IMG/VR virus record: IMGVR_UViG_3300029258_002750 | Coordinates: 124,001-188,000 of that record | Reading direction: 5' to 3' (one strand) | Length of the DNA stretch: 64,000 nucleotides | Shown: piece after piece, positions 21,113 to 51,789 of the stretch | How the letters are laid out: every line of letters starts with the position of its first letter | Position numbering within the stretch: the first letter of the stretch is position 1 | Made by a program: the position numbers and the translations under genes | Notes under the pieces: generated by a model | The model's input: only the letters and a program-made list of their open reading frames with translations | Told to the model about the DNA's origin: nothing | Database searches by the model: none

Positions 21113-21387
21113 CGCGATGACCGCCGGACATCGCCCCCCGACGTAAGTGCTTGAAAAAGGGGCGCGGCCGAGATGGCAACCTGAGCCCCCATATGAGGAA
21201 GAACCTGACGACCTCGACGACCCTGGCTGCCGCAGGCCCGATCGACGACGCCCGATCGACGACGGACAGCTTGGGCTGCACCCTGGTCGATGCAGTGCCT
21301 CTAAGCCCCCCAACCGAGGCCCCGTCCGACACACATAACGACGCCAAAGGACATACGTCGCTCCATCCTCAATAAAGGACTTAGGGT

Positions 21388-22413
21388 TGCCCCCAGGATG
21401 GGGGCACCGGACGCTTGTGTAAGCCCAGCTGGTGCCCCCATGATGGGGGCAGACCCACGGTCGGATTATGGGTTACGGCGGGGTCCCCGCCTGTGACCCG
21501 TCTAAAATTGGCTCTCCTCGGTCCTAGCGGGCACTCTGGCGAGCCCATTTTCAAAACTCGACCCTAGCTACCTGCCATCGAGAGTTGCCCCTCAGAGGCC
21601 CGTAGAGGCCCGTGGTGAAGAGCGGCTTCCGGCCGCCGATGAGGCCCGATCCCAGGAGGGCGCCTGGTCACACTGGTCTGTCACACACCTCGGGCGCGGG
21701 CCGCCGCCAGGCCGCCAGCCGCCAGGCCGCCAGCCGCCTGGGCTCCAGGCGGTCGGTCACGCCGGGTGTCACATCTCTGCCTGGTGCCCCCATCGTGGGG
21801 GCACGTAGCTCGGCTTCGGCCGCGCGCGTTTCCGAGCTGTGCTCGAGCGCACGGCCGGTGCCCCCATCGTGGGGGCACCGGACAGCGAGTGGCGTTCACG
21901 GTGGTGCTAACGAGTAAGGCGCGATCACGATGAAGGCGACCGGCCGAAGGCCGCCTGGCTACTGGGCTCCAGGCCGGGCATTACAGCAGCATCGTGGCGA
22001 GTGAGTATTCACGGCGAGGTCAACTGGGTGCGCGGGATTGAGGAAGGGGGTACCGTGTCCGTCCCCTACTAACAGCTACCGACAAGTAGGACACGGTCGC
22101 GGCCGGTGCCCCCGCCATGGGGGCACCTGACACCGAGCCTGAAGAACTTGTGGAGATCCCCTAGCGGGCAGCCCGCCCCCCAAGCGAACTGACCCGGGGG
22201 TGGCCCTCGACTCTTGGTCGAGGCCCGGCCGCCGGTGCCCCCGTGGCGGGGGCACTCGAGGCCGAGGGTGATACCCCTTTCGATTGGGGGTCGTGATCGA
22301 TTGCGCCGGTCAACGATGGAATAGTTGCTCAGAACCGGCTGCCAGCTCGATGTTTGTGGCGATTCGTCTTCGAGGCGGCAGAAACGCGGCCGGTGCCCCC
22401 ATGACGGGGGCGC
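21388..22413. repeat. array of 7 palindromes GTGCCCCC-N5-GGGGGCAC in a non-coding region
   Basis: copies at about 21388, 21431, 21783, 21855, 22105, 22234, 22392. Confidence 0.85.
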
Positions 22414-22414
22414 G

Positions 22415-22423
22415 GGGTAGAAC
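22415..22423 (+). promoter_or_regulatory. GGGTAGAAC putative promoter
   Basis: abuts last palindrome, upstream of HTH gene. Confidence 0.65.
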
Positions 22424-22442
22424 GAGGGTACTCGGGGGTCCG

Positions 22443-22673
22443 GTGAACCTGGCGCAGAGAGCCCGTATAGCCACAGGACTTAGCCAGCGCGAGCTGGCCA
22501 GGCGGCTTGGGGTCAGCCACTCGAGCTTCGAGCGCTGGGAGGCCGGAACAGTACCATCGTCGATGGCGCGCAACTTGTTGAGGCTGATCGAGTTGCACCC
22601 GCAGTTTGTTCTCGACGAGTTGGAGAAGAACGGGCCAGCGGTGTCCAACGGCCCATCCCGGGGCGCCACTTGA
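22443..22673 (+). CDS. XRE-family HTH regulator (HigA/MqsA-like)
   Basis: RARIATGLSQRELARRLGVSHSSFERWEAG...P. Confidence 0.85.
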   Translation: MNLAQRARIATGLSQRELARRLGVSHSSFERWEAGTVPSSMARNLLRLIELHPQFVLDELEKNGPAVSNGPSRGAT

Positions 22674-22737
22674 TGTCCAGTGGTCCATTTTCTATGCTGT
22701 CGGCGTTGTCCAGTAGACCATCGGAGGTGCAAGCGCG

Positions 22738-23358
22738 ATGACCCTTGTGTCGGAAGCCCGTGCTGCGACGGGGCTTACGCAGCGTGAGTTCGCGGCCATC
22801 GTTGGCGTCGATCCGTCCCAGATCGGCCACTGGGCGAGCGGCCGGAAGCGCGTAGCTAAAGCCGTGTCCTCACTGATGGTTGTGATCAAGGCCATGCCCG
22901 CCGAGGCCGTTGCTATTCTGGCCGAGCACCACGGGGTGAAACTCAAGGGCGAGGTCAGCGCTGCCCTCAACCGTGCGGGTTCCAGCCCAGCTGTTGTGCA
23001 GCGACCCGTTGAAGAAGTCGACCTCGAGGAGGCCGACCTCGGGGAGGCGGAGGACGGGTTCCGGCAGCTCGACTCGGGCTACCTGGTCTTCCCCGACCGG
23101 GGCATCGTGGCCGAGTTCGATGAGGACGACCCCCATGGGGGCGTCGAGCCGTCGCCCGAGCCCGACGATGCGGGCTTTGCGGGCGATGGCGGCCCGCCGC
23201 CCGGCCGCGCGCGGCCGGGTACCGAGGAGGACCGGGCCTACGGCCCGAATCGGCGGGGCGACACCGGCAAGCGCCGGGCAGTCGATGAGCAGGTCCCCGA
23301 CTACACGCCCGAGTTCGGCTACACGGGCGGCCAGGAGCCGCCCGGCGGCGGCCCTTGA
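22738..23358 (+). CDS. XRE-family HTH regulator with acidic disordered tail
   Basis: ARAATGLTQREFAAIVGVDPSQIGHWASG. Confidence 0.85.
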   Translation: MTLVSEARAATGLTQREFAAIVGVDPSQIGHWASGRKRVAKAVSSLMVVIKAMPAEAVAILAEHHGVKLKGEVSAALNRAGSSPAVVQRPVEEVDLEEADLGEAEDGFRQLDSGYLVFPDRGIVAEFDEDDPHGGVEPSPEPDDAGFAGDGGPPPGRARPGTEEDRAYGPNRRGDTGKRRAVDEQVPDYTPEFGYTGGQEPPGGGP

Positions 23359-23641
23359 CGCCGGGCATGACTCTGGGGTAGCCTACGGCTACCCCAGGTG
23401 AACTGGGGAACCCAGTCCAGTCTCGAGCCCGGCCCCATGCTGGTCGGGCTCGCGGTCCGTACAGGCCGCGACCCCGCTCGTGGGGATGGGGCGAGCGGGG
23501 CCGGGCGCAGAAGAAGCCTGACCAAGAGCCAGGAGGTAACGCCCAGCATCGTAGCCGAGCCCGGCCCGGCGGGCCACCAGATACCCCCTAGCGGGCAAGT
23601 CCTTATTTCTCGGTGCCGGGCCGCGCCGTAGACTGGGCCGG

Positions 23642-25220: not shown

Positions 25221-25223
25221 CTG

Positions 25224-25586
25224 CTACGGAACGAGCAGGTCAGCGTCGACCCCGGCCCAGAACGCTTCGCGAGCGCGGGCACCATCGACGCAGCCCTCCG
25301 CGCCGGGGATCGCGGGACGCGGGCAGCAGGGCGCACCGGCCCACCAGTCTGGTACCTCCCCGAGCCCCAGCCGGGCACCGCACTCGAAGCAGCGGCGGCC
25401 CTCCCCGCCGCCGCCGACCCCGGCCCAGTCAGCGCTGACCTCGAGCGGCGACCGGTCCAGCGGCCGAGCGTGCAGCTCACGCGGCTTGCTCCCGGCGCGG
25501 CGACGCTCCACCAGCAGCCGCAGCCCGGCCTCGATGTCACCCGTGGCCGCCGCCCGCTCCAGCTCCCGTAGTCGTTGGTCGCTCAT
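25224..25586 (-). CDS. hypothetical protein with MSDQRLRELER leader
   Basis: clean ORF; CFEC...CC. Confidence 0.65.
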   Translation of the reverse strand: MSDQRLRELERAAATGDIEAGLRLLVERRRAGSKPRELHARPLDRSPLEVSADWAGVGGGGEGRRCFECGARLGLGEVPDWWAGAPCCPRPAIPGAEGCVDGARAREAFWAGVDADLLVP

Positions 25587-26224
25587 ACCTGCCTGACGGG
25601 CGAGCCGCAGCCGACTGACACGGCCCCCGGTGCGGGCGACCCACAGGCCCCCTAGCGGGCAGTGCCCCCTCGAGTCGGCGATGACCCCCTCCCCCTAGCG
25701 GGCAGTGGGGTCTCGCCGAGCGGTTCCTGCGTTTTGTAGAGGGTCTCAACGCCCAGAACGGGCGGAACGTAAGGGGAGTCTCCAGCTCACCTTTCCGAAA
25801 CCGACCCTAACAGTAGCCGAACCCGGCCCTGCCCCACACCTGCGCACTGGACCCCGGCCCCCTGGCCATCTGCTTGGTTCCTGCGTTACCGAGGCCCCCC
25901 ATCGAAGGATGGGCGACGGAACCGGGTGGGACTATGGACCCACCCTCTTGGAAACTCACCCTGTAGGGGTGCAGCCCGCGCCCCCAGAGGGCTTCTGCGA
26001 CACGGGCACGCCATGATGCACAGCTCCCCAGCCCGAACACGACACCCGAACCTGCCATGACAGCTCACCGGCCGCGATCCGGTGGACGAGGAGTCGTTCG
26101 GGGGATAATCCAGGTCCCCAAAATCGCGCGGGAAGTGGTTGGTAGAGAGAAGAGCGCGCGCTCTCCCTCTCCGACTACCTCCGCTTACCCCCACAGCATC
26201 CCTTGGCGTCTTCGCCGCGTGTTT

Positions 26225-26233
26225 GGGTAGAAT
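26225..26233 (+). promoter_or_regulatory. GGGTAGAAT promoter variant
   Basis: upstream of ATG 26256. Confidence 0.55.
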
Positions 26234-26255
26234 CGTCGGCTGTGTGGAGATCTGG

Positions 26256-26588
26256 ATGAGCCTGCGCGATCGTCTGCTCGATGAAGCTGCGGCTCCCAAG
26301 GCGGACGTGGGGTGGGCGAACTCGCAGGCGAAGGCCGCGAAGAAGGCCGCGCAGTCTCGCTGGGGAGCCGGATGGAACCTGCTGTCGGTGGAGCAGCAGA
26401 AGGGCGCGGTCGCGCTGGTGCGATCGGCTGGCGGTGTGGAGGAGTCTGAACCGCACCCGGACTCACCTGCTGGGATCACGGCGCACTTTCGCCGCGAGCG
26501 GGAGATGAAGCTCAAGGTCGCGCGCGCGAAGAAGGAGCGCGCGAAGGCCGAGCGCGAGTGGAACAAGAAGAGGAAGGCGGGACGATGA
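26256..26588 (+). CDS. basic protein, possible internal head protein
   Basis: MSLRDRLLDE-A; Lys/Arg-rich. Confidence 0.7.
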   Translation: MSLRDRLLDEAAAPKADVGWANSQAKAAKKAAQSRWGAGWNLLSVEQQKGAVALVRSAGGVEESEPHPDSPAGITAHFRREREMKLKVARAKKERAKAEREWNKKRKAGR

Positions 26589-29877: not shown

Positions 29878-30278
29878 GGGGCAACACGACGACCTGTCCG
29901 ATGTGCCGTGGGGAGGCCAAGCGTACCGGGGCTTCCGAGGTTGATCTGGTCCTTCAGCTCCGCCAGCTGTTCGCCTGTCAGTTTTGCGACTGGTCGGGAT
30001 GGTTACCCGGCGAGGAGCTGGACAACATGCGCGCGCTCGGCGGTGTCTCGCCCGAGTTCCGCGTTGGGGATCGCGTGCGAGTCAACGAGCACTACGGCCT
30101 CCAGCCTGGCATCTACGTGGTGATGGAGACGGGCCTGCGCGTCGATCCCGAGACTCACGGACTGAGGATGTCGGCTCTCATCTCGCTCGAACGGGTCGGC
30201 GTTGACGCCGTCACGATCTCTGTCGAGTACCTTGACCATGTGGACGACGCTGTGACCAGGCTGGGTAGGCTCTCGTGA
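29874..30278 (+). CDS. Zn ribbon + SH3-like protein with C-tag
   Basis: CPMC...CQFC; FRVGDRVRV; DAVTRLGRL. Confidence 0.8.
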   Translation: MRGNTTTCPMCRGEAKRTGASEVDLVLQLRQLFACQFCDWSGWLPGEELDNMRALGGVSPEFRVGDRVRVNEHYGLQPGIYVVMETGLRVDPETHGLRMSALISLERVGVDAVTISVEYLDHVDDAVTRLGRLS

Positions 30279-30511
30279 GCTTCGCGACACTGTTCTGCGG
30301 CGGCTTCCGCGCGGGTGACCGTGTGCGTGTGAAGGGCGTCGAGATCATCGGCCGGATCAGGAAGTTTGAGATGCGCGCGGAGGAAGTGAAGGGCCTCGTG
30401 ATGTGGGCGATGGTGGTGTCGGAGACCCCTCGCATCGGCGCCGTCTGGTCGAAGATCGCCGAGCTGGAGCACGCGAGCGATGCCGTCACACGGCTGGGTC
30501 GGTTGGTGTGA
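30275..30511 (+). CDS. SH3/KOW-like protein with C-tag
   Basis: FRAGDRVRV; DAVTRLGRL. Confidence 0.8.
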   Translation: MSFATLFCGGFRAGDRVRVKGVEIIGRIRKFEMRAEEVKGLVMWAMVVSETPRIGAVWSKIAELEHASDAVTRLGRLV

Positions 30512-46536: not shown

Positions 46537-49500
46537 ATGAACCTGACCGAGCTTAGGGACTCCTGCATCCAGTGCGTGTGCAAGCATCTTGCCCAGGCCG
46601 AGGTGCTGATGGGCGAATCGGTCCAGGGTTACCCCGAGCACAGGTGGCTGGCGATTGGTCATATGGGCGAGGCGGCTGACGAGTGCTGCAAGGACTTCCC
46701 GAAGCTCGCGGCCGAGATCCGCAAGCACCGGACGCGTTACATGGCCGATCCCTCCTACTCCGTTCCGGTCATGGAGCTGATCGAGAAGGCGAATCGCATG
46801 GCGACCAAGACCGAGAACATCCAACCGGCGCGTACCCTCGATGAGGCCCTGGCCTTTCTGGATGAGGGGCGGCGGCGGAAGCACCGGGAGACGGAGCTAC
46901 TCACGCCCGCGCAACTGCACGCTCTGGTGAATCACGAGGCCGACCAGGACTACCTCAAGTGGGCGCACGGCTTCGCCAGCCGCTACAACGAGCGCGCCGG
47001 TCTCGATCTGCACGGGCCGGGCGGCGACGCCAAGGGCGCCGCCGAGGTTGCCGAGCAGGCCGAGGCGCTCGACGACGAGCGAGTCGACGGCCGGTTGGAC
47101 GAGGGCTCGTGGAAGGACAAGTTCTCCGAGCAGTGGCCCGGTGGTCCAGTCTCGCAGGACGAGAAGCTGTTCAAGGACCACGGCCACAAGCTCGGCGACT
47201 GGCTCCGCAAGTTCATGGACGACAACATCCCGAAGAAGGCCAAGGGGTGGCTCGCCAGCAAGAGTCAGGCGAAGTGGTACAAGAAGGGCCTGGAGGAGCT
47301 TGAGAAGGCGGCGAAGGCCGGTGGCGAGCCCCCGCCACCTCCGAAGAAGAAGAAGAAGTTCAAGCCCAGCCACTACCAGCAGGCGATCTTCGACTGGGTC
47401 GCCGATGCGTCGAAGAAGGACAAGGCCGCGCTCGTCGTGGACGCGAAGGCGGGCGCGGGAAAAAGCACCACCATGGAGCAGGCGCTCGAGTTCGTGCCGC
47501 CCGGCCAGAAGGTCGTGTTCCTGGCCTTCAACACCGACATTGCCAACGCGCTGGCCGAGCGCGTCAAGGACATGAAGAACGTCGAGGCCGCGACGATCAA
47601 CGCCTACGGGCGCGCGTCGGTGGTCAAGGCGTTCAAGAAGGGCGGCAAGCCGCCTGAGCTGGTGAAGAACAAGAACCGGCTCATCTGCGACGAGCTGGTG
47701 AAGAAGCTCGCCCCCGACAAGAAGACAGCCGAGAAGTACGAGTCGACCTACGGCTACGACATGGGCGAGGCCATCACCAAGCGCAAGATGATGGGCACGC
47801 TCGACGAGAAGGGCGAGATGCAGTTCCCGCCCTGGAAGGAGGTCTTGGCCAGGTTCGAGATCGACCTTCCGACGTCTGGGACCCAAGGCGAGTACCTCAC
47901 GCCGCAGCAGGTCACGGACACGCTGGAGGAGGCGTTCCAGCGGAGTGTCGATGACAAGGTGACGATGGAGTACGCCGACCAGGTGCTCTGGCCGGTGATG
48001 CACAACCTGCCGATCATCAGCCGGGCGACTGGGAAGAAGGCCAACCTCGACTGGGCGATGGTTGACGAGGTCCAAGACCTCTGCCCGCTCGAGCGCGAGT
48101 TCGCCAAGCGACTCGCCCCGCGCCACATGCTGGTGGGCGACCCGAACCAGTCGATCTACGCCTTCAAGGGCTCAGATCCCGACTCGATGTCGAAGATGCA
48201 GGAGCAGCTCGGCGCGGAGGAGAAGCCGCTCTCGATCTGCTATCGCTGCCCGAAGAAGGTCATCACCGAGGCGCAGACGCTCGTTCCCACGATCGAGGCG
48301 GCCCCGAACGCACCTGACGGCGACGTCCAGACCATCAAGCACGCGCAGTTCTACGAGACCCTCAAGCCGGGGGACTTCGTGCTCTGCCGCACCAACGCGC
48401 CGAACGTGGCCGCCGCGCTGGGGCTGATCGCTCAGGGCAAGAAGGCGAACGTCGTCGGCCGTGACATCGGGAAGTCCCTGAGCAGGCTGATCGAGAGGAT
48501 CGGCGGCAAGAAGGGCCACAAGGACATGCCCATCGACGAGTTCGCTGGGAAGGTGCAGAGCTGGCACGCGAAGGAGACCAAGCGGCTGACGGCCGAGAAG
48601 AAGGAGCACTTGCTCCAGGGTCTCGACGACAAGCGCGACTGCCTCCAGGCTCTCATGTCGAAGGGCGACGTGAAGGTCGCCGGTGACCTGATCAAGGTGG
48701 TCAACCAGCTGTTCGTGCAGGACCCGACACCGGCCATCAACTTCTCCTCGGTGCACAAGGCGAAGGGTCTGGAGGCGGACAACGTCTACATCCAGCGGCC
48801 CGACCTCCTGCCGCTACCGAAGGCGCTGAAGTCCGAGGATCCGGTCCAGATCCAGCAGGAAGACAACCTCAAGTACGTGGCGATCACGCGCGCGAAGAAG
48901 GCGCTGACGTGGGTCCTGCCGCCGCCGAAGGAGGGCGAGGACGAGGGGCCGACCGCTCCGCTGCCGTCACCGCCTCCGCCTCCCAAGCCCTCGCCCGCGC
49001 CTCCCCCGCCACCCGCGCCGGAGGCGAAGAAGCCCAAGGCGAAGAAGAAGGTCACCAAGAAGAAGAAGGTCACCAAGAAGAAGGTCAAGAAGAAGAAGGT
49101 CACCAAGAAGAAGGTCAAGAAGAAGGGTGTCACGAAGGCCGACATCGCCAAGCTGATGTCGATGATCCCGGACGACGCCACAATGGCCGACTGGGGCGAG
49201 TCAATTGACCCGAACGGCGCGACGCTGTTCGAGCGTGTTGTCGGGGTCCTCGATGAGGGTGCCGACTTCACCAAGGGCCGACGGAAGGTCTCCAAGAAGA
49301 AGCTGGTCGCGAAGAAGAAGGCTGCGGCCAGCGTCAAGATGCCCAAGAACGCGGCCCAGGCGGCCGAGCAGATCAAGGCCGCGCTGGCGAAGGGCGATCA
49401 GGCGACGGCGAACCGCGTCTGGGAGCTGTACGTGCACGGCGGCGGGCTGGGCGAGCCGGGGATGTGGGGCTACCAGTCGCGCAAGGCCGACATTCGCCAG

Positions 49501-51789
49501 ACCAAGCTCGCCAAGCTCGGCGTCTCGTGGAAGGGGTCTGGGCCGGTCGTCGAGGGGAAGGAGACGACTGCGGATCTGGTGCTGGCCGAGGTGAACGCGC
49601 TGACCGGAGGGAACACCATCAGCGCGACCGCGCTGGCCAGGAAGATCGGTCGAGCGCGAGGAACCGTCGTCAAGGCGGCCAGTAGGCTGGCCATGCGCGG
49701 CAAGATCGAGCGGTTGTCTGGTCTGGACGTCTACGCGCCTCTTCGAGAGGGGCGCGAGGTCAACAAGGACGGCACGATGTCCTGCGGCGTCTTCCTGCCG
49801 GTGCCGTCGAACCTGGCTCGCTACTTCCCGGACAAGAGCGAGGAGGACGACTCGGTCCCGCACTTCACGGTGCTCTACGCCGGTGATCTCTCGCCAGCTG
49901 ACTACGGGAAGCTGGTCGATGTGGTCGGCAAGGTCGCTCGGAAGCACGAGCCCTTCCTGATGCGGATGGGCGGCTACGGCGAGTTCACGAACAACAACGG
50001 CCAGACGATCCCGCACATGATCGGCAACGCCTGGCCCGAGAAGGCGAGCCTCAACGATCTGCACGCGGCTATCCGCAAGGCGGCCGAGCAGGCCGGTGTT
50101 CCGATCGCGCACACGTATGGACCAAACGAAGACAAGAAGAAGGGCTACGCCGAACAGTTCAAGGCGCACGCGACGCTGGCCTACATCAACCCGGGCGAAC
50201 CGGCCTACAAGGGCCACAGGCCCGAAGGGAGCTGGAAGGTGACCGACCTGGAGCTGTGGGGCCACGAGAAGTATCGGGTGCCGCTCGGTGCGACCGTGAC
50301 CGAGGACTACAAGGCGACCAAGAAGAAGGCGAAGAAGAAGGCGAAGAAGCCCAAGGGGTCCAAGGCATTCCTCAAGGACGTGGAGGAAGCCGCCAGCAAG
50401 CTCGCTGGCAAGCCGCTCAAGGTCGACAAGCACTCGACGACGCTTGGGAAGGGATTCGACTACTCGTTCAAGAGCGGTGGCCGGTTCAAGATCCGGCTTC
50501 GCCCGGATGGCTCGTTCACGGTCAAGCTCCAGGGACAACCGAAGCCGCACTATCGCTACCGGGGCGACGGCGCGACCCTCGCTGGCGCGCTGGCTTCGAT
50601 GAAGTCGGAGAAGACCAAGGGTAAGAAGCCTCCCGAGCACCACGTGCAGATCGCGAAGGCCGGGAAGAAGCCCAAGATGAAGCCGTGGGCAGTCGGCGAG
50701 CCTGGCCCCAAGCAGGCGAAGGTGAATGGCATCATGCTGTTCAACGACCTGGGCGTGGACCAGGAGACCTGGGACCGCTACGCGACGGCCTGCAAGGACT
50801 CGATGGACCTGCTCAAGAAGCGCGGCTTCGGCTTCATGCTGCCGAACGTGACGATGCACCTCCGCACCGGCACGGCGCTGGGAAACTACGACATGAAGAC
50901 GAAGATCGTCGAGATCTTCGTGAACACGATCGGCGCGAAGCAGACTCCGGCCAAGATCATGACCACGATGGTCCACGAGATGGGACACCACTACTACTAT
51001 CGGGAGATCCCTCGCGCGCGCAGGAAGACCTACGCCTGGTACTTCGGGCTCGCGAAGAAGCCAACCGAGAAGGGGAAGAAGCACGGCGACTTCCCCAGCT
51101 CCTACGGGGCGACGAAGCGCTACGAGGACTTCGCCGAGATCTTCGCGGCCTACATCGGCAAGGGGCACAAGATCCAGAGTCGCTACAAGCTCACGAAGGA
51201 CATCATGGACCGCTTCCGTACGTTCATGGCGCCCGACAAGCGCGTGGACCTGCGCGAGGACGAGGAGCTGTTCGGCGATGGCCTCTCGTCGGTGCTCGAG
51301 CGGCGCGAGGTGGTGACCCTGGGCGTCTGCTGCGCGCTCTGCGAGGCCGAGGGCAGCAAGACCGGAGGGGGCAGCAAATGGGTGCATCCGCTGGCGCTGC
51401 TCGCCAGGAGGCGCGCCAGGATCGATGCCAGGGACGGTCACGACGACGCGGCCGAGTATTGGCGCGGGTGGGCTGTCGGTTCGTTCCTGACGGCCAAGAA
51501 GGGCAAGGGCGACGACCCGGGCAGCAAGAGCACTCATCGTCTCGCGCTCCGCGCGCGCGACTGGGCCGAGAAGGATGACGAGGAGGGGCACAGCGACGCG
51601 GCCGAGTACTGGCGCGGGTGGGCAGCCGGGGCGTTCCTGACGGCCGAGGCTGTGGACTTCCCTCACCGCTACAGCTCGCCTGCCCAGGGCTCCTCGCGCA
51701 CGGGCGTGGGGACTGCTCCCGTCGAAGACCCGGGGGAAGCGCTGCCGCCGCCCGCGAAGCGGCGGAAGCTGAAGACGCCGCGCCCGTAA
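46537..51789 (+). CDS. 1750-aa polyvalent protein: UvrD/SF1 helicase + 2H phosphoesterase + zincin metallopeptidase-like
   Basis: AKAGAGKST, DEVQD, VGDPNQSIYAF, YRCP, SVHKAKGLE, YVAITRAK; PHFT (49858) and HATL (50167); HEMGH (50974) ...EDFAE. Confidence 0.9.
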   Translation: MNLTELRDSCIQCVCKHLAQAEVLMGESVQGYPEHRWLAIGHMGEAADECCKDFPKLAAEIRKHRTRYMADPSYSVPVMELIEKANRMATKTENIQPARTLDEALAFLDEGRRRKHRETELLTPAQLHALVNHEADQDYLKWAHGFASRYNERAGLDLHGPGGDAKGAAEVAEQAEALDDERVDGRLDEGSWKDKFSEQWPGGPVSQDEKLFKDHGHKLGDWLRKFMDDNIPKKAKGWLASKSQAKWYKKGLEELEKAAKAGGEPPPPPKKKKKFKPSHYQQAIFDWVADASKKDKAALVVDAKAGAGKSTTMEQALEFVPPGQKVVFLAFNTDIANALAERVKDMKNVEAATINAYGRASVVKAFKKGGKPPELVKNKNRLICDELVKKLAPDKKTAEKYESTYGYDMGEAITKRKMMGTLDEKGEMQFPPWKEVLARFEIDLPTSGTQGEYLTPQQVTDTLEEAFQRSVDDKVTMEYADQVLWPVMHNLPIISRATGKKANLDWAMVDEVQDLCPLEREFAKRLAPRHMLVGDPNQSIYAFKGSDPDSMSKMQEQLGAEEKPLSICYRCPKKVITEAQTLVPTIEAAPNAPDGDVQTIKHAQFYETLKPGDFVLCRTNAPNVAAALGLIAQGKKANVVGRDIGKSLSRLIERIGGKKGHKDMPIDEFAGKVQSWHAKETKRLTAEKKEHLLQGLDDKRDCLQALMSKGDVKVAGDLIKVVNQLFVQDPTPAINFSSVHKAKGLEADNVYIQRPDLLPLPKALKSEDPVQIQQEDNLKYVAITRAKKALTWVLPPPKEGEDEGPTAPLPSPPPPPKPSPAPPPPPAPEAKKPKAKKKVTKKKKVTKKKVKKKKVTKKKVKKKGVTKADIAKLMSMIPDDATMADWGESIDPNGATLFERVVGVLDEGADFTKGRRKVSKKKLVAKKKAAASVKMPKNAAQAAEQIKAALAKGDQATANRVWELYVHGGGLGEPGMWGYQSRKADIRQTKLAKLGVSWKGSGPVVEGKETTADLVLAEVNALTGGNTISATALARKIGRARGTVVKAASRLAMRGKIERLSGLDVYAPLREGREVNKDGTMSCGVFLPVPSNLARYFPDKSEEDDSVPHFTVLYAGDLSPADYGKLVDVVGKVARKHEPFLMRMGGYGEFTNNNGQTIPHMIGNAWPEKASLNDLHAAIRKAAEQAGVPIAHTYGPNEDKKKGYAEQFKAHATLAYINPGEPAYKGHRPEGSWKVTDLELWGHEKYRVPLGATVTEDYKATKKKAKKKAKKPKGSKAFLKDVEEAASKLAGKPLKVDKHSTTLGKGFDYSFKSGGRFKIRLRPDGSFTVKLQGQPKPHYRYRGDGATLAGALASMKSEKTKGKKPPEHHVQIAKAGKKPKMKPWAVGEPGPKQAKVNGIMLFNDLGVDQETWDRYATACKDSMDLLKKRGFGFMLPNVTMHLRTGTALGNYDMKTKIVEIFVNTIGAKQTPAKIMTTMVHEMGHHYYYREIPRARRKTYAWYFGLAKKPTEKGKKHGDFPSSYGATKRYEDFAEIFAAYIGKGHKIQSRYKLTKDIMDRFRTFMAPDKRVDLREDEELFGDGLSSVLERREVVTLGVCCALCEAEGSKTGGGSKWVHPLALLARRRARIDARDGHDDAAEYWRGWAVGSFLTAKKGKGDDPGSKSTHRLALRARDWAEKDDEEGHSDAAEYWRGWAAGAFLTAEAVDFPHRYSSPAQGSSRTGVGTAPVEDPGEALPPPAKRRKLKTPRP
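49041..49130 (+). repeat. AAGAAG(AAG)GTC(ACC) microrepeats encoding a KKKVT linker
   Basis: read directly. Confidence 0.8.
51445..51645 (+). repeat. 150-nt-period repeat encoding DAAEYWRGWAxGxFLTA twice
   Basis: copies 51445-51495 and 51595-51645. Confidence 0.85.

What the first reader, a model, noticed from the sequence alone, without database searches (positions are those of the whole stretch)
21388..23358. Seven-palindrome operator-like array beside two XRE HTH genes
A gene-free stretch of about 1.3 kb holds 7 copies of GTGCCCCC-N5-GGGGGCAC with variable spacers (AGGAT, ATGAT, ATCGT x2, GCCAT, GTGGC, ATGAC). The last copy abuts the GGGTAGAAC motif upstream of two tandem HTH genes. Constant half-sites with a free 5-nt spacer fit a dimeric DNA-binding protein. 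Candidates are an autoregulatory or lysis-lysogeny switch, replication-origin iterons, a partition centromere or a packaging/terminus site. Unique long spacers are lacking, so it is not CRISPR. A separate hairpin lies at 21470-21499.
Basis: partly seen in the sequence, partly recalled or inferred. Interest (0 to 1): 0.62.

Follow-up and report, generated by a model that had tools for sequence, protein, structure and literature searches.

The report
Co-evolving operator array beside jumbo-phage regulators
A 1.35-kb gene-free stretch of an uncultivated 275-kb phage carries seven copies of one 21-bp palindrome, which are most likely binding sites for the small dimeric regulator encoded next door; two more copies bracket the phage's replication-initiator genes, and all sites change in step in related phages.

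Summary
GTGCCCCC-N5-GGGGGCAC occurs 7 times at window 21387-22413 (0.06 expected) in a 1353-bp gap without genes. The last copy lies 1 nt from a GGGTAGAAC promoter element upstream of two XRE genes.

The window is part of a 275,101-bp jumbo-phage record. That genome holds only two further copies. They bracket a small-wHTH plus replication-initiator operon 115 kb away.

The same layout (array, promoter, HTH1, HTH2, and two sites around the initiator operon) recurs in two further lineages. Each has its own mirrored half-site variant: GTGCCACC/GGTGGCAC, and GCACCC(C/G)C/G(G/C)GGGTGC. More distant HTH1 homologues are again surrounded by GTGCCCCC palindromes.

Identical arms, differing centres and in-step change at orthologous positions point to a sequence-specific dimeric reader, not a mere hairpin. 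HTH1 is the best candidate: it resembles HigA2 and MqsA, a homodimer model passes its controls, and its recognition-helix residues differ where the sites differ. The initiator's helix is unchanged between two lineages with different sites.

The most likely function is autoregulation plus control or insulation of the replication operon. Replication-origin iterons and RNA hairpins remain rivals. There is no integrase or ParA, the spacing is irregular and there is no AT-rich unwinding element. Binding was not tested.

The parts
21387..21407 (.). Palindrome copy 1 (TTGCCCCC-AGGAT-GGGGGCAC). Its outer left arm is replaced by the conserved block AAGGACTTAGG.
   Evidence: the position next to AAGGACTTAGG is conserved in G002 and L102
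21432..21452 (.). Palindrome copy 2. The 45-nt spacing to copy 1 is conserved (45, 45 and 47 nt in three lineages).
   Evidence: the strain SNP at 21443 falls in the spacer only
21784..21804 (.). Palindrome copy 3 (exact)
21855..21881 (.). Palindrome copy 4 (exact core 21858-21878; 12-bp arms CCGGTGCCCCCA/TGGGGGCACCGG)
22106..22126 (.). Palindrome copy 5 (exact), followed 35 nt later by CCCCTAGCGGGCA. This module is conserved in G002, L105 and L102.
22235..22255 (.). Palindrome copy 6 (exact). In strain variants, the 158 bp from here to copy 7 are deleted by recombination between the two copies.
22393..22413 (.). Palindrome copy 7 (GTGCCCCC-ATGAC-GGGGGCGC), 1 nt upstream of the promoter element. 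It is the likely autoregulatory operator covering the -35/spacer region.
   Evidence: the same 1-nt geometry is seen in G002, L105 and L102
22415..22423 (+). GGGTAGAAC, a -10-like element of the phage's main promoter class, here driving HTH1-HTH2
   Evidence: 51 copies genome-wide, mostly exactly 6 nt before a start codon
22446..22673 (+). HTH1, a 75-aa XRE protein of the HigA2/MqsA-C-terminal type. It is the best candidate reader of the palindrome.
   Evidence: HigA2 5.3e-5; homodimer model ipSAE 0.58 vs best control 0.00; helix variation
22738..23358 (+). HTH2, a 206-aa XRE protein with a conserved proline/glycine-rich C-terminal motif. Its recognition helix is nearly invariant across lineages.
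21140..21176 (+). Single-copy conserved block GACGTAAGTGCTTGAAAAAGG..., a sigma-70-like -35/-10 candidate pointing into the array
   Evidence: not found by the strict consensus scan
21524..21620 (+). CTAGCGGGCA motif followed by a block of about 95 nt (…CCCATTTTCAAAACTCGA…CCCGTGGTGA) that is nearly invariant in three lineages
22161..22170 (+). Second CTAGCGGGCA motif inside the array (further copies at 23588, 25652 and 25695)
21468..21501 (.).
   Evidence: not conserved
23373..23397 (+). Unrelated perfect 11-bp hairpin 15 nt after the HTH2 stop codon. It looks like a terminator but has no T tract.

Best explanation
The seven palindromes are double-stranded DNA operators for a phage-encoded dimeric helix-turn-helix protein. 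The most probable reader is HTH1, the 75-aa HigA2/MqsA-like XRE protein encoded immediately downstream. Each monomer would read one arm: the CCCCC and GGGGG cores lie 10 bp apart, on one face of the helix. Copy 7 sits 1 nt from the -10-like GGGTAGAAC element, so its centre is near -27. Occupancy there should shut off the HTH1-HTH2 promoter (negative autoregulation). The six upstream copies lie in a conserved 1.35-kb non-coding stretch, downstream of a conserved sigma-70-like promoter block. They would act as extra anchors for looping or cooperative binding, and/or as serial roadblocks to transcription entering from the left. The two remote copies sit at the ends of transcription units around the small-wHTH/initiator operon. 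One is about 57 nt after the preceding gene. The other overlaps the initiator stop codon, at a conserved 33 nt before the dnaN promoter element. They would tie expression or insulation of the replication genes to the same regulator. What is shown: site number, positions, conservation, in-step half-site change, protein family and a dimer model. What is inferred: which protein binds, repression, and roadblock or looping.
For: - **Site family.** There are 9 copies in 275 kb: 7 in the array and 2 around the initiator operon. Only 21 perfect hairpins with stems of 9 bp or more exist genome-wide. Five belong to this family, and the other intergenic ones all have different sequences.
- **Pattern within a genome.** The arms are identical and the centres differ.
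- **In-step change.** In G002 all 9 orthologous sites carry the mirrored change CCCCC to CCACC. In the L102/L106 lineage the array and both initiator-flanking sites carry GCACCC(C/G)C. This calls for a trans-acting sequence reader.
- **Mismatched arms.** Four L102 copies pair a CACCCGC arm with a GGGGGTG arm, giving an internal G-G mismatch. G002 copies also have uncompensated internal mismatches. Half-sites therefore behave independently, as expected for duplex recognition.
- **Promoter geometry.** The proximal site abuts the promoter element at the same 1-nt distance in four lineages. In distant relatives (HTH1 53-58% identical) GTGCCCCC-ATAAT-GGGGGCAC palindromes again sit on both sides of the tandem HTH genes. 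One lies 17 nt before GGTAGAAC, and a half-site follows it.
- **HTH1 identity.** HTH1 is an XRE protein. Its nearest solved relatives are the dimeric antitoxin repressors HigA2. The homodimer model scores 0.58 against a best control of 0.00. That mark was reached by 21 of 30 solved homodimers and 0 of 23 monomers. Partner pLDDT was at least 76 and the three runs shared all contacts. The interface uses residues 37-62 and leaves the recognition helix free.
- **Helix variation.** HTH1 helix residues that align with 434 repressor Q28, Q29 and S30 are H-S-S in G000, R-A-T in G002 and L105 (which share one site type) and A-S-S in L102.
- **Other candidates.** The initiator's recognition helix is identical in G000 and G002 although their sites differ. 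The HTH2 helix does not track site type.
- **Strain variation.** SNPs avoid the arms. Indels are modules bounded by palindromes.
Against: - No binding data exist.
- Helix and site do not co-vary one to one. The distant relatives L108 and L109 have the G000-type half-site but a different HTH1 helix (S-P-S-V).
- Seven sites spread irregularly over 1 kb (spacings 45, 352, 74, 248, 129 and 158 nt) are more than a simple autoregulator needs.
- The two remote sites bracket a replication-initiator operon, which also fits an initiator or small-wHTH reader. Wing residues of the initiator do differ between G000 and G002.
- Both remote sites lie at 3' ends of genes, where terminators would be. This phage's other terminator-like hairpins also lack T tracts.
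- The recurring A-to-G variant in the right arm always gives a G-U-compatible pair on the sense strand. This is a weak hint of an RNA-level role.
- SNP avoidance of the arms is not significant (about 11 SNPs, P about 0.3).
Confidence: 0.5

Rival explanations
1. The array is a replication origin, or a copy-control locus. The palindromes would be dyad-symmetric iterons bound by dimers of the wHTH initiator or of the small MarR-like wHTH protein encoded just upstream of it. This resembles lambda O binding its dyad iterons, or SPP1 G38P binding two distant origins. The two sites around the initiator operon would serve autoregulation or handcuffing. Copy 7 would couple XRE expression to initiator occupancy.
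For: The only two non-array copies bracket the small-wHTH/initiator operon in all three lineages. The initiator matches replication-initiation and O-like families (phrog_270 6.6e-13; HTH_36) and is followed by dnaN, a DnaC/IstB-like loader and dnaB. The array lies in a long conserved non-coding stretch with variable tandem repeats and a promoter that could give transcriptional activation. Both wHTH proteins change in the third lineage, where the site also changes.
Against: The initiator's helix-turn-helix is residue-for-residue identical in G000 and G002 although every site differs. The small wHTH protein differs only at two hydrophobic positions. The spacing is irregular and unphased, unlike known iteron clusters. 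No AT-rich unwinding element is present: the gap's minimum is 50% GC in 40-nt windows, while the genome's most AT-rich spot is at 94.3 kb. GC skew simply follows gene strand. A better origin candidate exists next to the initiator: a non-coding stretch of about 220 nt that is roughly 90% identical (judged by eye, not computed) between lineages whose proteins are about 50% identical. In distant relatives the palindromes cluster tightly around the HTH pair.
Confidence: 0.2
2. The palindromes act as hairpins in RNA (or transiently single-stranded DNA). They would be factor-dependent or U-tract-less terminators, or processing or stability elements, punctuating a long non-coding transcript or several small RNAs made from the gap, and ending the transcription units around the initiator operon. 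A hairpin-specific protein would explain the constant stem.
For: All copies fold into stable hairpins (-17 to -27 kcal/mol). The remote copies sit exactly at gene ends, one overlapping the initiator stop codon. Other terminator-like hairpins of this phage also lack T tracts. Conserved promoter-like blocks (TTGAAA…, CCCCTAGCGGGCA) point into the array, and strongly conserved non-coding blocks follow them. The recurrent right-arm A-to-G variant is G-U compatible only on the sense strand.
Against: A structure-only element would let the stems of different copies drift apart through compensatory changes. Instead, 16 arm positions are the same in all copies while the loops differ. All nine orthologous copies also switched to the same new sequence in G002. 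Internal uncompensated mismatches are tolerated. Sequence-specific reading of an A-form stem is unusual. No Rfam family matches. No RNA data exist for this phage.
Confidence: 0.15
3. The array is a partition centromere (parS/sopC/KorB-OB-like) or a terminase recognition (pac) site.
For: Clustered palindromes plus a few dispersed copies resemble KorB OB sites or the dispersed SopB sites of N15 (from knowledge). A ParB_N-like protein is encoded at genome 58.2-59.2 kb.
Against: No ParA-type ATPase was found, nor an integrase or other sign of a prophage or plasmid lifestyle. The ParB_N match is marginal (25.9 bits against a 26.3 cut-off) and the gene is far from the array. The record's terminal repeat is a 144-bp assembly overlap, so there is no evidence of ends here. 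No read pile-ups could be assessed, because only contigs are held.
Confidence: 0.05

Closest known systems
Autoregulated XRE-family dimers with palindromic operators (HigA2, the MqsA C-terminal domain, 434/P22-type Cro and repressors)
   Same: A small XRE HTH protein whose nearest solved relatives are HigA2. It has a predicted symmetric dimer, a palindromic site with cores one helical turn apart, and an operator overlapping its own promoter.
   Different: There is no partner toxin. Nine sites exist rather than one to three, and seven of them spread over 1 kb of conserved non-coding DNA. Remote sites sit at a replication operon. The element is 21-27 bp long.
Multi-site phage repressor networks (phiC31 conserved inverted repeats, mycobacteriophage L5/Bxb1 stoperators, P1 C1 operators). 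Comparison is from knowledge, not tested here.
   Same: One phage regulator with many near-identical sites. Some lie at promoters and others inside or at the ends of transcription units, where they can block elongation.
   Different: Those belong to temperate phages and their sites are scattered genome-wide. Stoperators and C1 sites are asymmetric. Here the sites are palindromic, concentrated in one array, and the phage shows no lysogeny genes.
Dyad-symmetric iterons of lambda ori bound by O protein, and iteron plasmids (P1 incC/incA, pSC101, R6K). Comparison is from knowledge.
   Same: Repeated sites for a wHTH initiator-type protein. Sites flank or lie near the initiator gene. The site count of seven is in the range of known iteron clusters.
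   Different: Known iterons are closely and regularly spaced next to an AT-rich region. Here the spacing is 45-352 nt and there is no AT-rich element. The array is 115 kb from the initiator gene, and the initiator helix does not change when the site does.
RK2 KorB OB palindromes and the dispersed SopB sites of N15. Comparison is from knowledge.
   Same: A palindromic site family used both near promoters and at a distance, linking regulation of replication and maintenance genes.
   Different: Those readers are ParB-family proteins working with a ParA. No ParA is present here, and the ParB_N-like gene is unlinked.

Membership tests
XRE/Cro-C1 HTH autoregulator with palindromic operator | HTH_3/HTH_31 DNA-binding domain in the adjacent protein | tested here: met
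   HTH1: HTH_31 1.6e-9 and HTH_3 1e-6. HTH2: HTH_3 3.7e-6. HigA2 is the nearest solved relative, 5.3e-5.
XRE/Cro-C1 HTH autoregulator with palindromic operator | Homodimer with both recognition helices free | tested here: met
   The model supports a dimer but does not show one: ipSAE 0.58 vs best control 0.00. That mark was reached by 21 of 30 solved homodimers and 0 of 23 monomers. Partner pLDDT at least 76; the three runs shared all contacts. The interface uses residues 37-62.
XRE/Cro-C1 HTH autoregulator with palindromic operator | Palindromic site overlapping the regulator's own promoter | tested here: met
   Copy 7 ends 1 nt before GGGTAGAAC in G000, G002, L105 and L102. The promoter role of GGGTAGAAC is inferred from 51 copies placed 6 nt before start codons.
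XRE/Cro-C1 HTH autoregulator with palindromic operator | Specific binding of the protein to the site | not testable with these tools
   Only indirect evidence exists. Helix residues co-vary with site type in 4 close lineages but not in distant ones.
Iteron-type replication origin | Repeated initiator-binding sites, closely and regularly spaced | tested here: not met
   Spacings are 45, 352, 74, 248, 129 and 158 nt. They are not phased, and they differ between lineages except for the first pair.
Iteron-type replication origin | Adjacent AT-rich DNA-unwinding element | tested here: not met
   The lowest 40-nt GC in the gap is 50%, about the 1st percentile. The genome minimum of 32.5% lies at 94.3 kb.
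Iteron-type replication origin | Sites co-evolve with the initiator's DNA-binding domain | tested here: inconclusive
   The helix is identical in G000 and G002 despite different sites, but wing residues differ. In the third lineage both helix and site change.
Iteron-type replication origin | Supports initiator-dependent replication | not testable with these tools
   GC skew follows gene strand and is uninformative.
Intrinsic (Rho-independent) terminator | GC-rich hairpin followed by a T/U tract | tested here: not met
   No T tract follows any copy. The hairpins themselves are stable.
CRISPR array | Regularly spaced repeats with unique spacers of uniform length | tested here: not met
   Repeat-to-repeat distances range from 45 to 352 nt. 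The intervening DNA is conserved between lineages.
ParABS / KorB-type centromere | Cognate ParA ATPase and ParB encoded with the site | tested here: not met
   No AAA_31/ParA match. A marginal ParB_N-like protein lies 87 kb away.
Mycobacteriophage-type stoperators | Asymmetric 13-17-bp sites, dispersed genome-wide, orientation-dependent | tested here: not met
   The sites are palindromic, and 7 of 9 lie within 1 kb.

The most novel reading that the evidence does not exclude
The array and the two initiator-flanking sites form one regulatory circuit special to this jumbo-phage group. A small XRE dimer would be titrated by a multi-site 'sponge' in a conserved, transcribed non-coding locus. The same protein would gate, by roadblock or insulation, the operon for the replication initiator. 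Early transcription, regulator dosage (which rises with genome copy number) and the onset of DNA replication would then be coupled. In a second form of this reading, the array is itself a second, XRE-gated lytic origin. The in-step specificity switches between lineages would then act as an incompatibility or 'immunity' barrier between co-infecting relatives.
Probability: 0.15. Interest if true: 0.7.

Novelty: new variant of a known kind. Interest (0 to 1): 0.45.

Why it matters
Almost nothing is known about how uncultivated high-GC jumbo phages time their gene expression and replication. This locus offers a compact system that can be synthesised: a 75-aa regulator and a 21-bp site. Three natural specificity variants exist: CCCCC, CCACC and GCACCC(C/G)C. 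All orthologous sites of a genome changed in step. That makes it a natural experiment on how a regulator and its whole site set shift specificity together, and a possible source of orthogonal repressor/operator pairs. The link to the replication-initiator operon would, if confirmed, show a regulatory connection between an early regulator and replication genes in a jumbo phage. If the origin reading is right instead, it would locate an origin in this phage group.

Tried and rejected
- **RNA families and tRNAs.** Rfam and the tRNA scan found nothing in the window.
- **Phage genome similarity.** blastn of the locus against 50,697 phage genomes gave no match.
- **Promoter and terminator scan.** The strict sigma-70/terminator consensus scan found no promoter, and only chance-level terminator-like sites that do not coincide with the palindromes.
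- **Hidden genes.** Six-frame comparison of the gap with two relatives gave hits in all frames alike, so no hidden gene is present.
- **Pattern search of IMG/VR.** Nineteen other contigs each carry a single exact palindrome. None has an HTH1 homologue or an array, so these are background hairpins.
- **GC skew.** It tracks gene strand only.
- **Lifestyle genes.** No integrase and no ParA.
- **Terminal repeat.** It is a 144-bp assembly overlap, so no termini can be placed.
- **Expression.** No RNA run holds the locus, and the runs that do are kept only as contigs. Transcription, transcript ends and read pile-ups could not be assessed.
- **RNAalifold on the left half of the gap.** Beyond the palindromes themselves it gave mostly invariant pairs, and the covariation term was +0.13. 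This gives no support for a conserved RNA fold beyond the hairpins.
- **SNP avoidance of the arms.** Consistent with constraint but not significant.
Full report
**1. What is there**

The pattern GTGCCCCC-N5-GGGGGCAC, with up to two mismatches allowed, matches seven times in the 64-kb window. All seven lie between 21387 and 22413. Dinucleotide-preserving shuffles give 0.06 expected matches, and none of 100 shuffles reaches seven. Four copies are exact. Three have one mismatch at an outer arm position. Several copies extend to 11-12-bp arms (CCGGTGCCCCC…GGGGGCACCGG).

A GC3-based gene call finds no coding signal between 21093 and 22445, a 1353-bp stretch. A six-frame comparison with relatives shows conservation in all frames alike, so no hidden gene is present.

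Copy 7 ends 1 nt before GGGTAGAAC (22415-22423). Two XRE genes follow:
- HTH1 at 22446-22673 (75 aa).
- HTH2 at 22738-23358 (206 aa).

**2. Genomic setting**

The window is bases 124001-188000 of a 275,101-bp IMG/VR virus record of about 65% GC. Its 'direct terminal repeat' is a 144-bp exact end overlap. That indicates an assembly circle, not mapped ends. I found no integrase and no ParA. There is one marginal ParB_N-like protein beside a Sigma70_r2 protein at 58-60 kb.

GGGTAGAAC occurs 51 times. Most copies lie exactly 6 nt before an ATG or GTG, on whichever strand the gene is on. I read it as the -10 part of the phage's main promoter class, giving mostly leaderless mRNAs. This is an inference. 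HTH1 would have a leader of about 16 nt.

**3. The two extra copies**

Genome-wide there are only nine good copies. The two outside the array are at genome 30082 and 31885. The first lies 57 nt after the stop codon of the preceding gene. The second overlaps the stop codon of a 391-aa wHTH protein and ends 33 nt before the GGGTAGAAC element of the next gene.

That 391-aa protein matches replication-initiation and O-like families (phrog_270 6.6e-13; HTH_36). A 106-aa MarR-like wHTH gene precedes it. A sliding clamp, an IstB/DnaC-like loader and a DnaB helicase follow it. The palindrome therefore marks two places: the gap beside the XRE pair, and both ends of the initiator operon.

**4. Relatives**

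| Lineage | Record | Similarity to G000 | Half-site | Layout seen |
|---|---|---|---|---|
| G002 | 159,664-bp IMG/VR record | initiator 76-77%, HTH1 74%, HTH2 62-73% | GTGCCACC / GGTGGCAC | 7-copy array, last copy 1 nt from GGGGTAGAAC, HTH1, HTH2, plus 2 copies flanking the initiator operon |
| L105 | 1.4-kb Logan contig | HTH2 62% | same as G002 | 3 copies seen, same promoter geometry |
| L102 and L106 | two ENA scaffolds from one sample | HTH2 50%, initiator 52% | GCACCC(C/G)C / G(G/C)GGGTGC | 1.38-kb gap with at least 8 palindromes, last one abutting GGGTAGAAC; one site 45 nt after the preceding gene, another overlapping the initiator stop codon |
| L108, L109, L110 | JGI and ENA contigs | HTH1 53-58% | GTGCCCCC / GGGGGCAC (as G000) | tandem XRE genes with 2 copies upstream and 1-3 downstream |

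- In G002 every one of the nine sites carries the mirrored change CCCCC to CCACC.
- L105 is described.
- In L106 the second site sits at the same 33-nt distance from the dnaN promoter element as in G000.
- In L108 and L109 the spacer is ATAAT or ATTAT. One upstream copy lies 17 nt before GGTAGAAC, and a half-site follows it.
- Nineteen other IMG/VR contigs with an exact match are singletons without an HTH1 homologue.

The array is therefore conserved, specific to this phage group, and always linked to the XRE pair.

**5. Strain-level variation**

Near-identical contigs and Logan contigs from other samples show three things:
- A 158-bp deletion whose joint lies inside palindromes 6 and 7.
- An insertion of about 95 bp carrying one extra palindrome.
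- SNPs in the gap that all fall outside the arms, including one in the spacer of copy 2.

The site count stays at seven in G000, in the variant strain and in G002. The absence of SNPs in the arms is consistent with constraint but is not significant (about 11 SNPs, P about 0.3).

**6. Why a sequence-specific reader, and why probably on duplex DNA**

Within a genome, 16 arm positions are the same in all copies while the centres differ. Copy-by-copy orthology is clear:
- Copy 1 sits next to AAGGACTTAGG.
- Copy 2 follows 45-47 nt later.
- Copy 5 lies 35 nt before CCCCTAGCGGGCA.
- Copy 7 sits at the promoter.
- Two copies sit at the initiator operon.

Even so, all copies switched to the same new arms in G002. 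Independent compensatory change at nine sites is not credible. Gene conversion would also have homogenised the centres. A trans-acting reader whose specificity shifted is the economical explanation.

A structure-only hairpin is further disfavoured by tolerated internal mismatches. Four L102 copies pair CACCCGC with GGGGGTG, and G002 copies have uncompensated changes. If single-stranded, all copies would nevertheless fold well (-17 to -27 kcal/mol). Other terminator-like hairpins of this phage also lack T tracts. An RNA-level role therefore cannot be excluded.

**7. Which protein**

HTH1 is an XRE protein. Its nearest solved relatives are the dimeric repressor-antitoxins HigA2 (5.3e-5).

A homodimer model passes its controls. 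The score is 0.58 against a best control of 0.00. That mark was reached by 21 of 30 solved homodimers and 0 of 23 monomers. Partner pLDDT was at least 76, and the three runs shared all contacts. The interface uses residues 37-62 and leaves the recognition helix free. The model supports a dimer but does not show one.

The candidate readers compare as follows across lineages:

| Protein | G000 | G002 | L105 | L102/L106 |
|---|---|---|---|---|
| HTH1 helix residues aligned with 434 repressor Q28, Q29, S30 | H-S-S | R-A-T | R-A-T | A-S-S |
| Initiator HTH | reference | identical to G000 (wing residues differ) | not available | changed |
| Small wHTH | reference | two hydrophobic changes | not available | changed |
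| HTH2 helix | near-invariant | near-invariant | near-invariant | near-invariant |

- The 434 alignment and the base-contacting role of those residues come from established knowledge, not from a test here.
- G002 and L105 share the same site type.
- The HTH2 helix does not follow site type. It parallels instead the invariant CCCCTAGCGGGCA motif, which may be its site (a speculation).

One caveat applies. The distant relatives keep G000-type arms with a different HTH1 helix (S-P-S-V), so the correspondence is not one to one.

**8. Function**

Copy 7's centre lies about 15 nt upstream of the TAGAAC hexamer, near -27. That is a repressing position, so negative autoregulation is the simplest reading.

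The site after the initiator gene is centred near -59 of the dnaN promoter and at the very end of the initiator gene. It could insulate, block or activate.

The left half of the gap is itself highly conserved across lineages whose proteins are only 50-75% identical. It contains:
- A single-copy TTGAAA-type promoter block.
- An AAGGAC(A/T)TA repeat.
- A block of about 95 nt after CTAGCGGGCA.

It is probably transcribed or bound by further factors. The six upstream operators may loop with copy 7, block readthrough from that promoter, or buffer regulator dosage. These roles are inferred.

**9. Rivals**

- **Origin iterons (0.2).** This is favoured by the initiator-flanking sites. It is weakened by irregular spacing, by the lack of an AT-rich element, by the unchanged initiator helix, and by a better origin candidate next to the initiator. 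That candidate is a non-coding stretch of about 220 nt, roughly 90% identical between lineages as judged by eye from the printed sequences, not computed.
- **RNA or single-stranded DNA hairpins (0.15).** See section 6.
- **Centromere or pac site (0.05).** There is no ParA, and no DNA ends can be placed.

**10. Verdict**

It is best filed as a new variant of a known kind: a multi-operator set for a small XRE dimer. It is unusual in three ways. The seven-site array lies in a long conserved non-coding locus. Sites bracket the replication-initiator operon. The site specificity switches in step between lineages. Binding and function remain untested.

Noticed in passing
whole genome; in the window e.g. 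13282, 17066, 19836, 22415, 28310, 32502, 42126, 53057: GGGTAGAAC occurs 51 times in the 275-kb genome. Most copies lie exactly 6 nt before an ATG or GTG, on the gene's strand, and several form back-to-back divergent pairs. It looks like the -10 part of a promoter class that makes leaderless mRNAs. It is also present in all relatives found.
   Followed up: partly
window 21524, 22161, 23588, 25652, 25695 (all + strand): CCCCTAGCGGGCA has five copies in the genome. All lie within this 4-kb locus, all are intergenic and all are on one strand. The sequence is invariant in G002 (5 copies), L102 (7) and L105. It may be the site of HTH2, whose recognition helix is also near-invariant, or a second promoter type.
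   Followed up: partly
window 21140-21176: There is a single-copy block GACGTAAGTGCTTGAAAAAGG, followed 17 nt later by TGGCAA, TAGCTA or TAGCCA. It is nearly invariant in three lineages. It is a candidate host-type promoter reading into the array. Part of it is the inverted complement of AAGGACTTAGG at 21375.
   Followed up: partly
genome about 30100-30340 (L025 4100-4400), outside the window: A non-coding stretch of about 220 nt upstream of the small-wHTH/initiator operon is roughly 90% identical (judged by eye, not computed) between G000 and L106. Their proteins are only about 50% identical. It contains a divergent GGGTAGAAC/GGTAGAAC pair. It is a candidate origin or non-coding RNA.
   Followed up: no
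window 23150-23355 (HTH2 C-terminus): HTH2 ends in a strongly conserved motif, DDAGFAGDGGPPPGRAP … VPDYTPEFGYTGGQEPPGGGP. The motif is also present, partly duplicated, in an unrelated 155-aa XRE protein (P0005). It matches no Pfam family and may be a docking peptide for a host or phage protein.
   Followed up: no
window 22676-22720: A direct repeat TGTCCAGT(G/A)G(T/A)CCA occurs twice between HTH1 and HTH2. L102 has a perfect 17-bp inverted repeat at the same place, and L108 and L109 have TACAAC/GTTGTA repeats. This looks like a separate control element for HTH2.
   Followed up: no
window 21236-21263 and 21700-21740: Short tandem repeats (GCCCGATCGACGAC at 2 vs 3 units, and a GCCGCCAG-type 15-nt unit) vary in copy number between strains.
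   Followed up: partly
window 22018-22024 and 22232-22391: Strain variants carry an insertion of about 95 bp with an extra palindrome, and a 158-bp deletion between palindromes 6 and 7. The total stays at seven copies, as in G002.
   Followed up: yes
genome 58.2-60.1 kb (L107 2203-4064), outside the window: A ParB_N-like protein (325 aa) is followed directly by a protein with Sigma-70 region 2. This is a candidate phage sigma factor.
   Followed up: no
window 46537-51789: The 1750-aa ORF is not a tape measure. It is a UvrD-like helicase fused to a 2',5'-RNA-ligase-superfamily domain.
   Followed up: no
window 25221-26557: A second gap of about 1.3 kb without coding signal lies 2 kb downstream. 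It holds two of the CCCCTAGCGGGCA copies.
   Followed up: no
genome 94341, outside the window: The most AT-rich 40-nt window of the genome (32.5% GC) lies in a 631-bp intergenic gap next to a perfect 10-bp hairpin. It may be a DNA-unwinding element.
   Followed up: no
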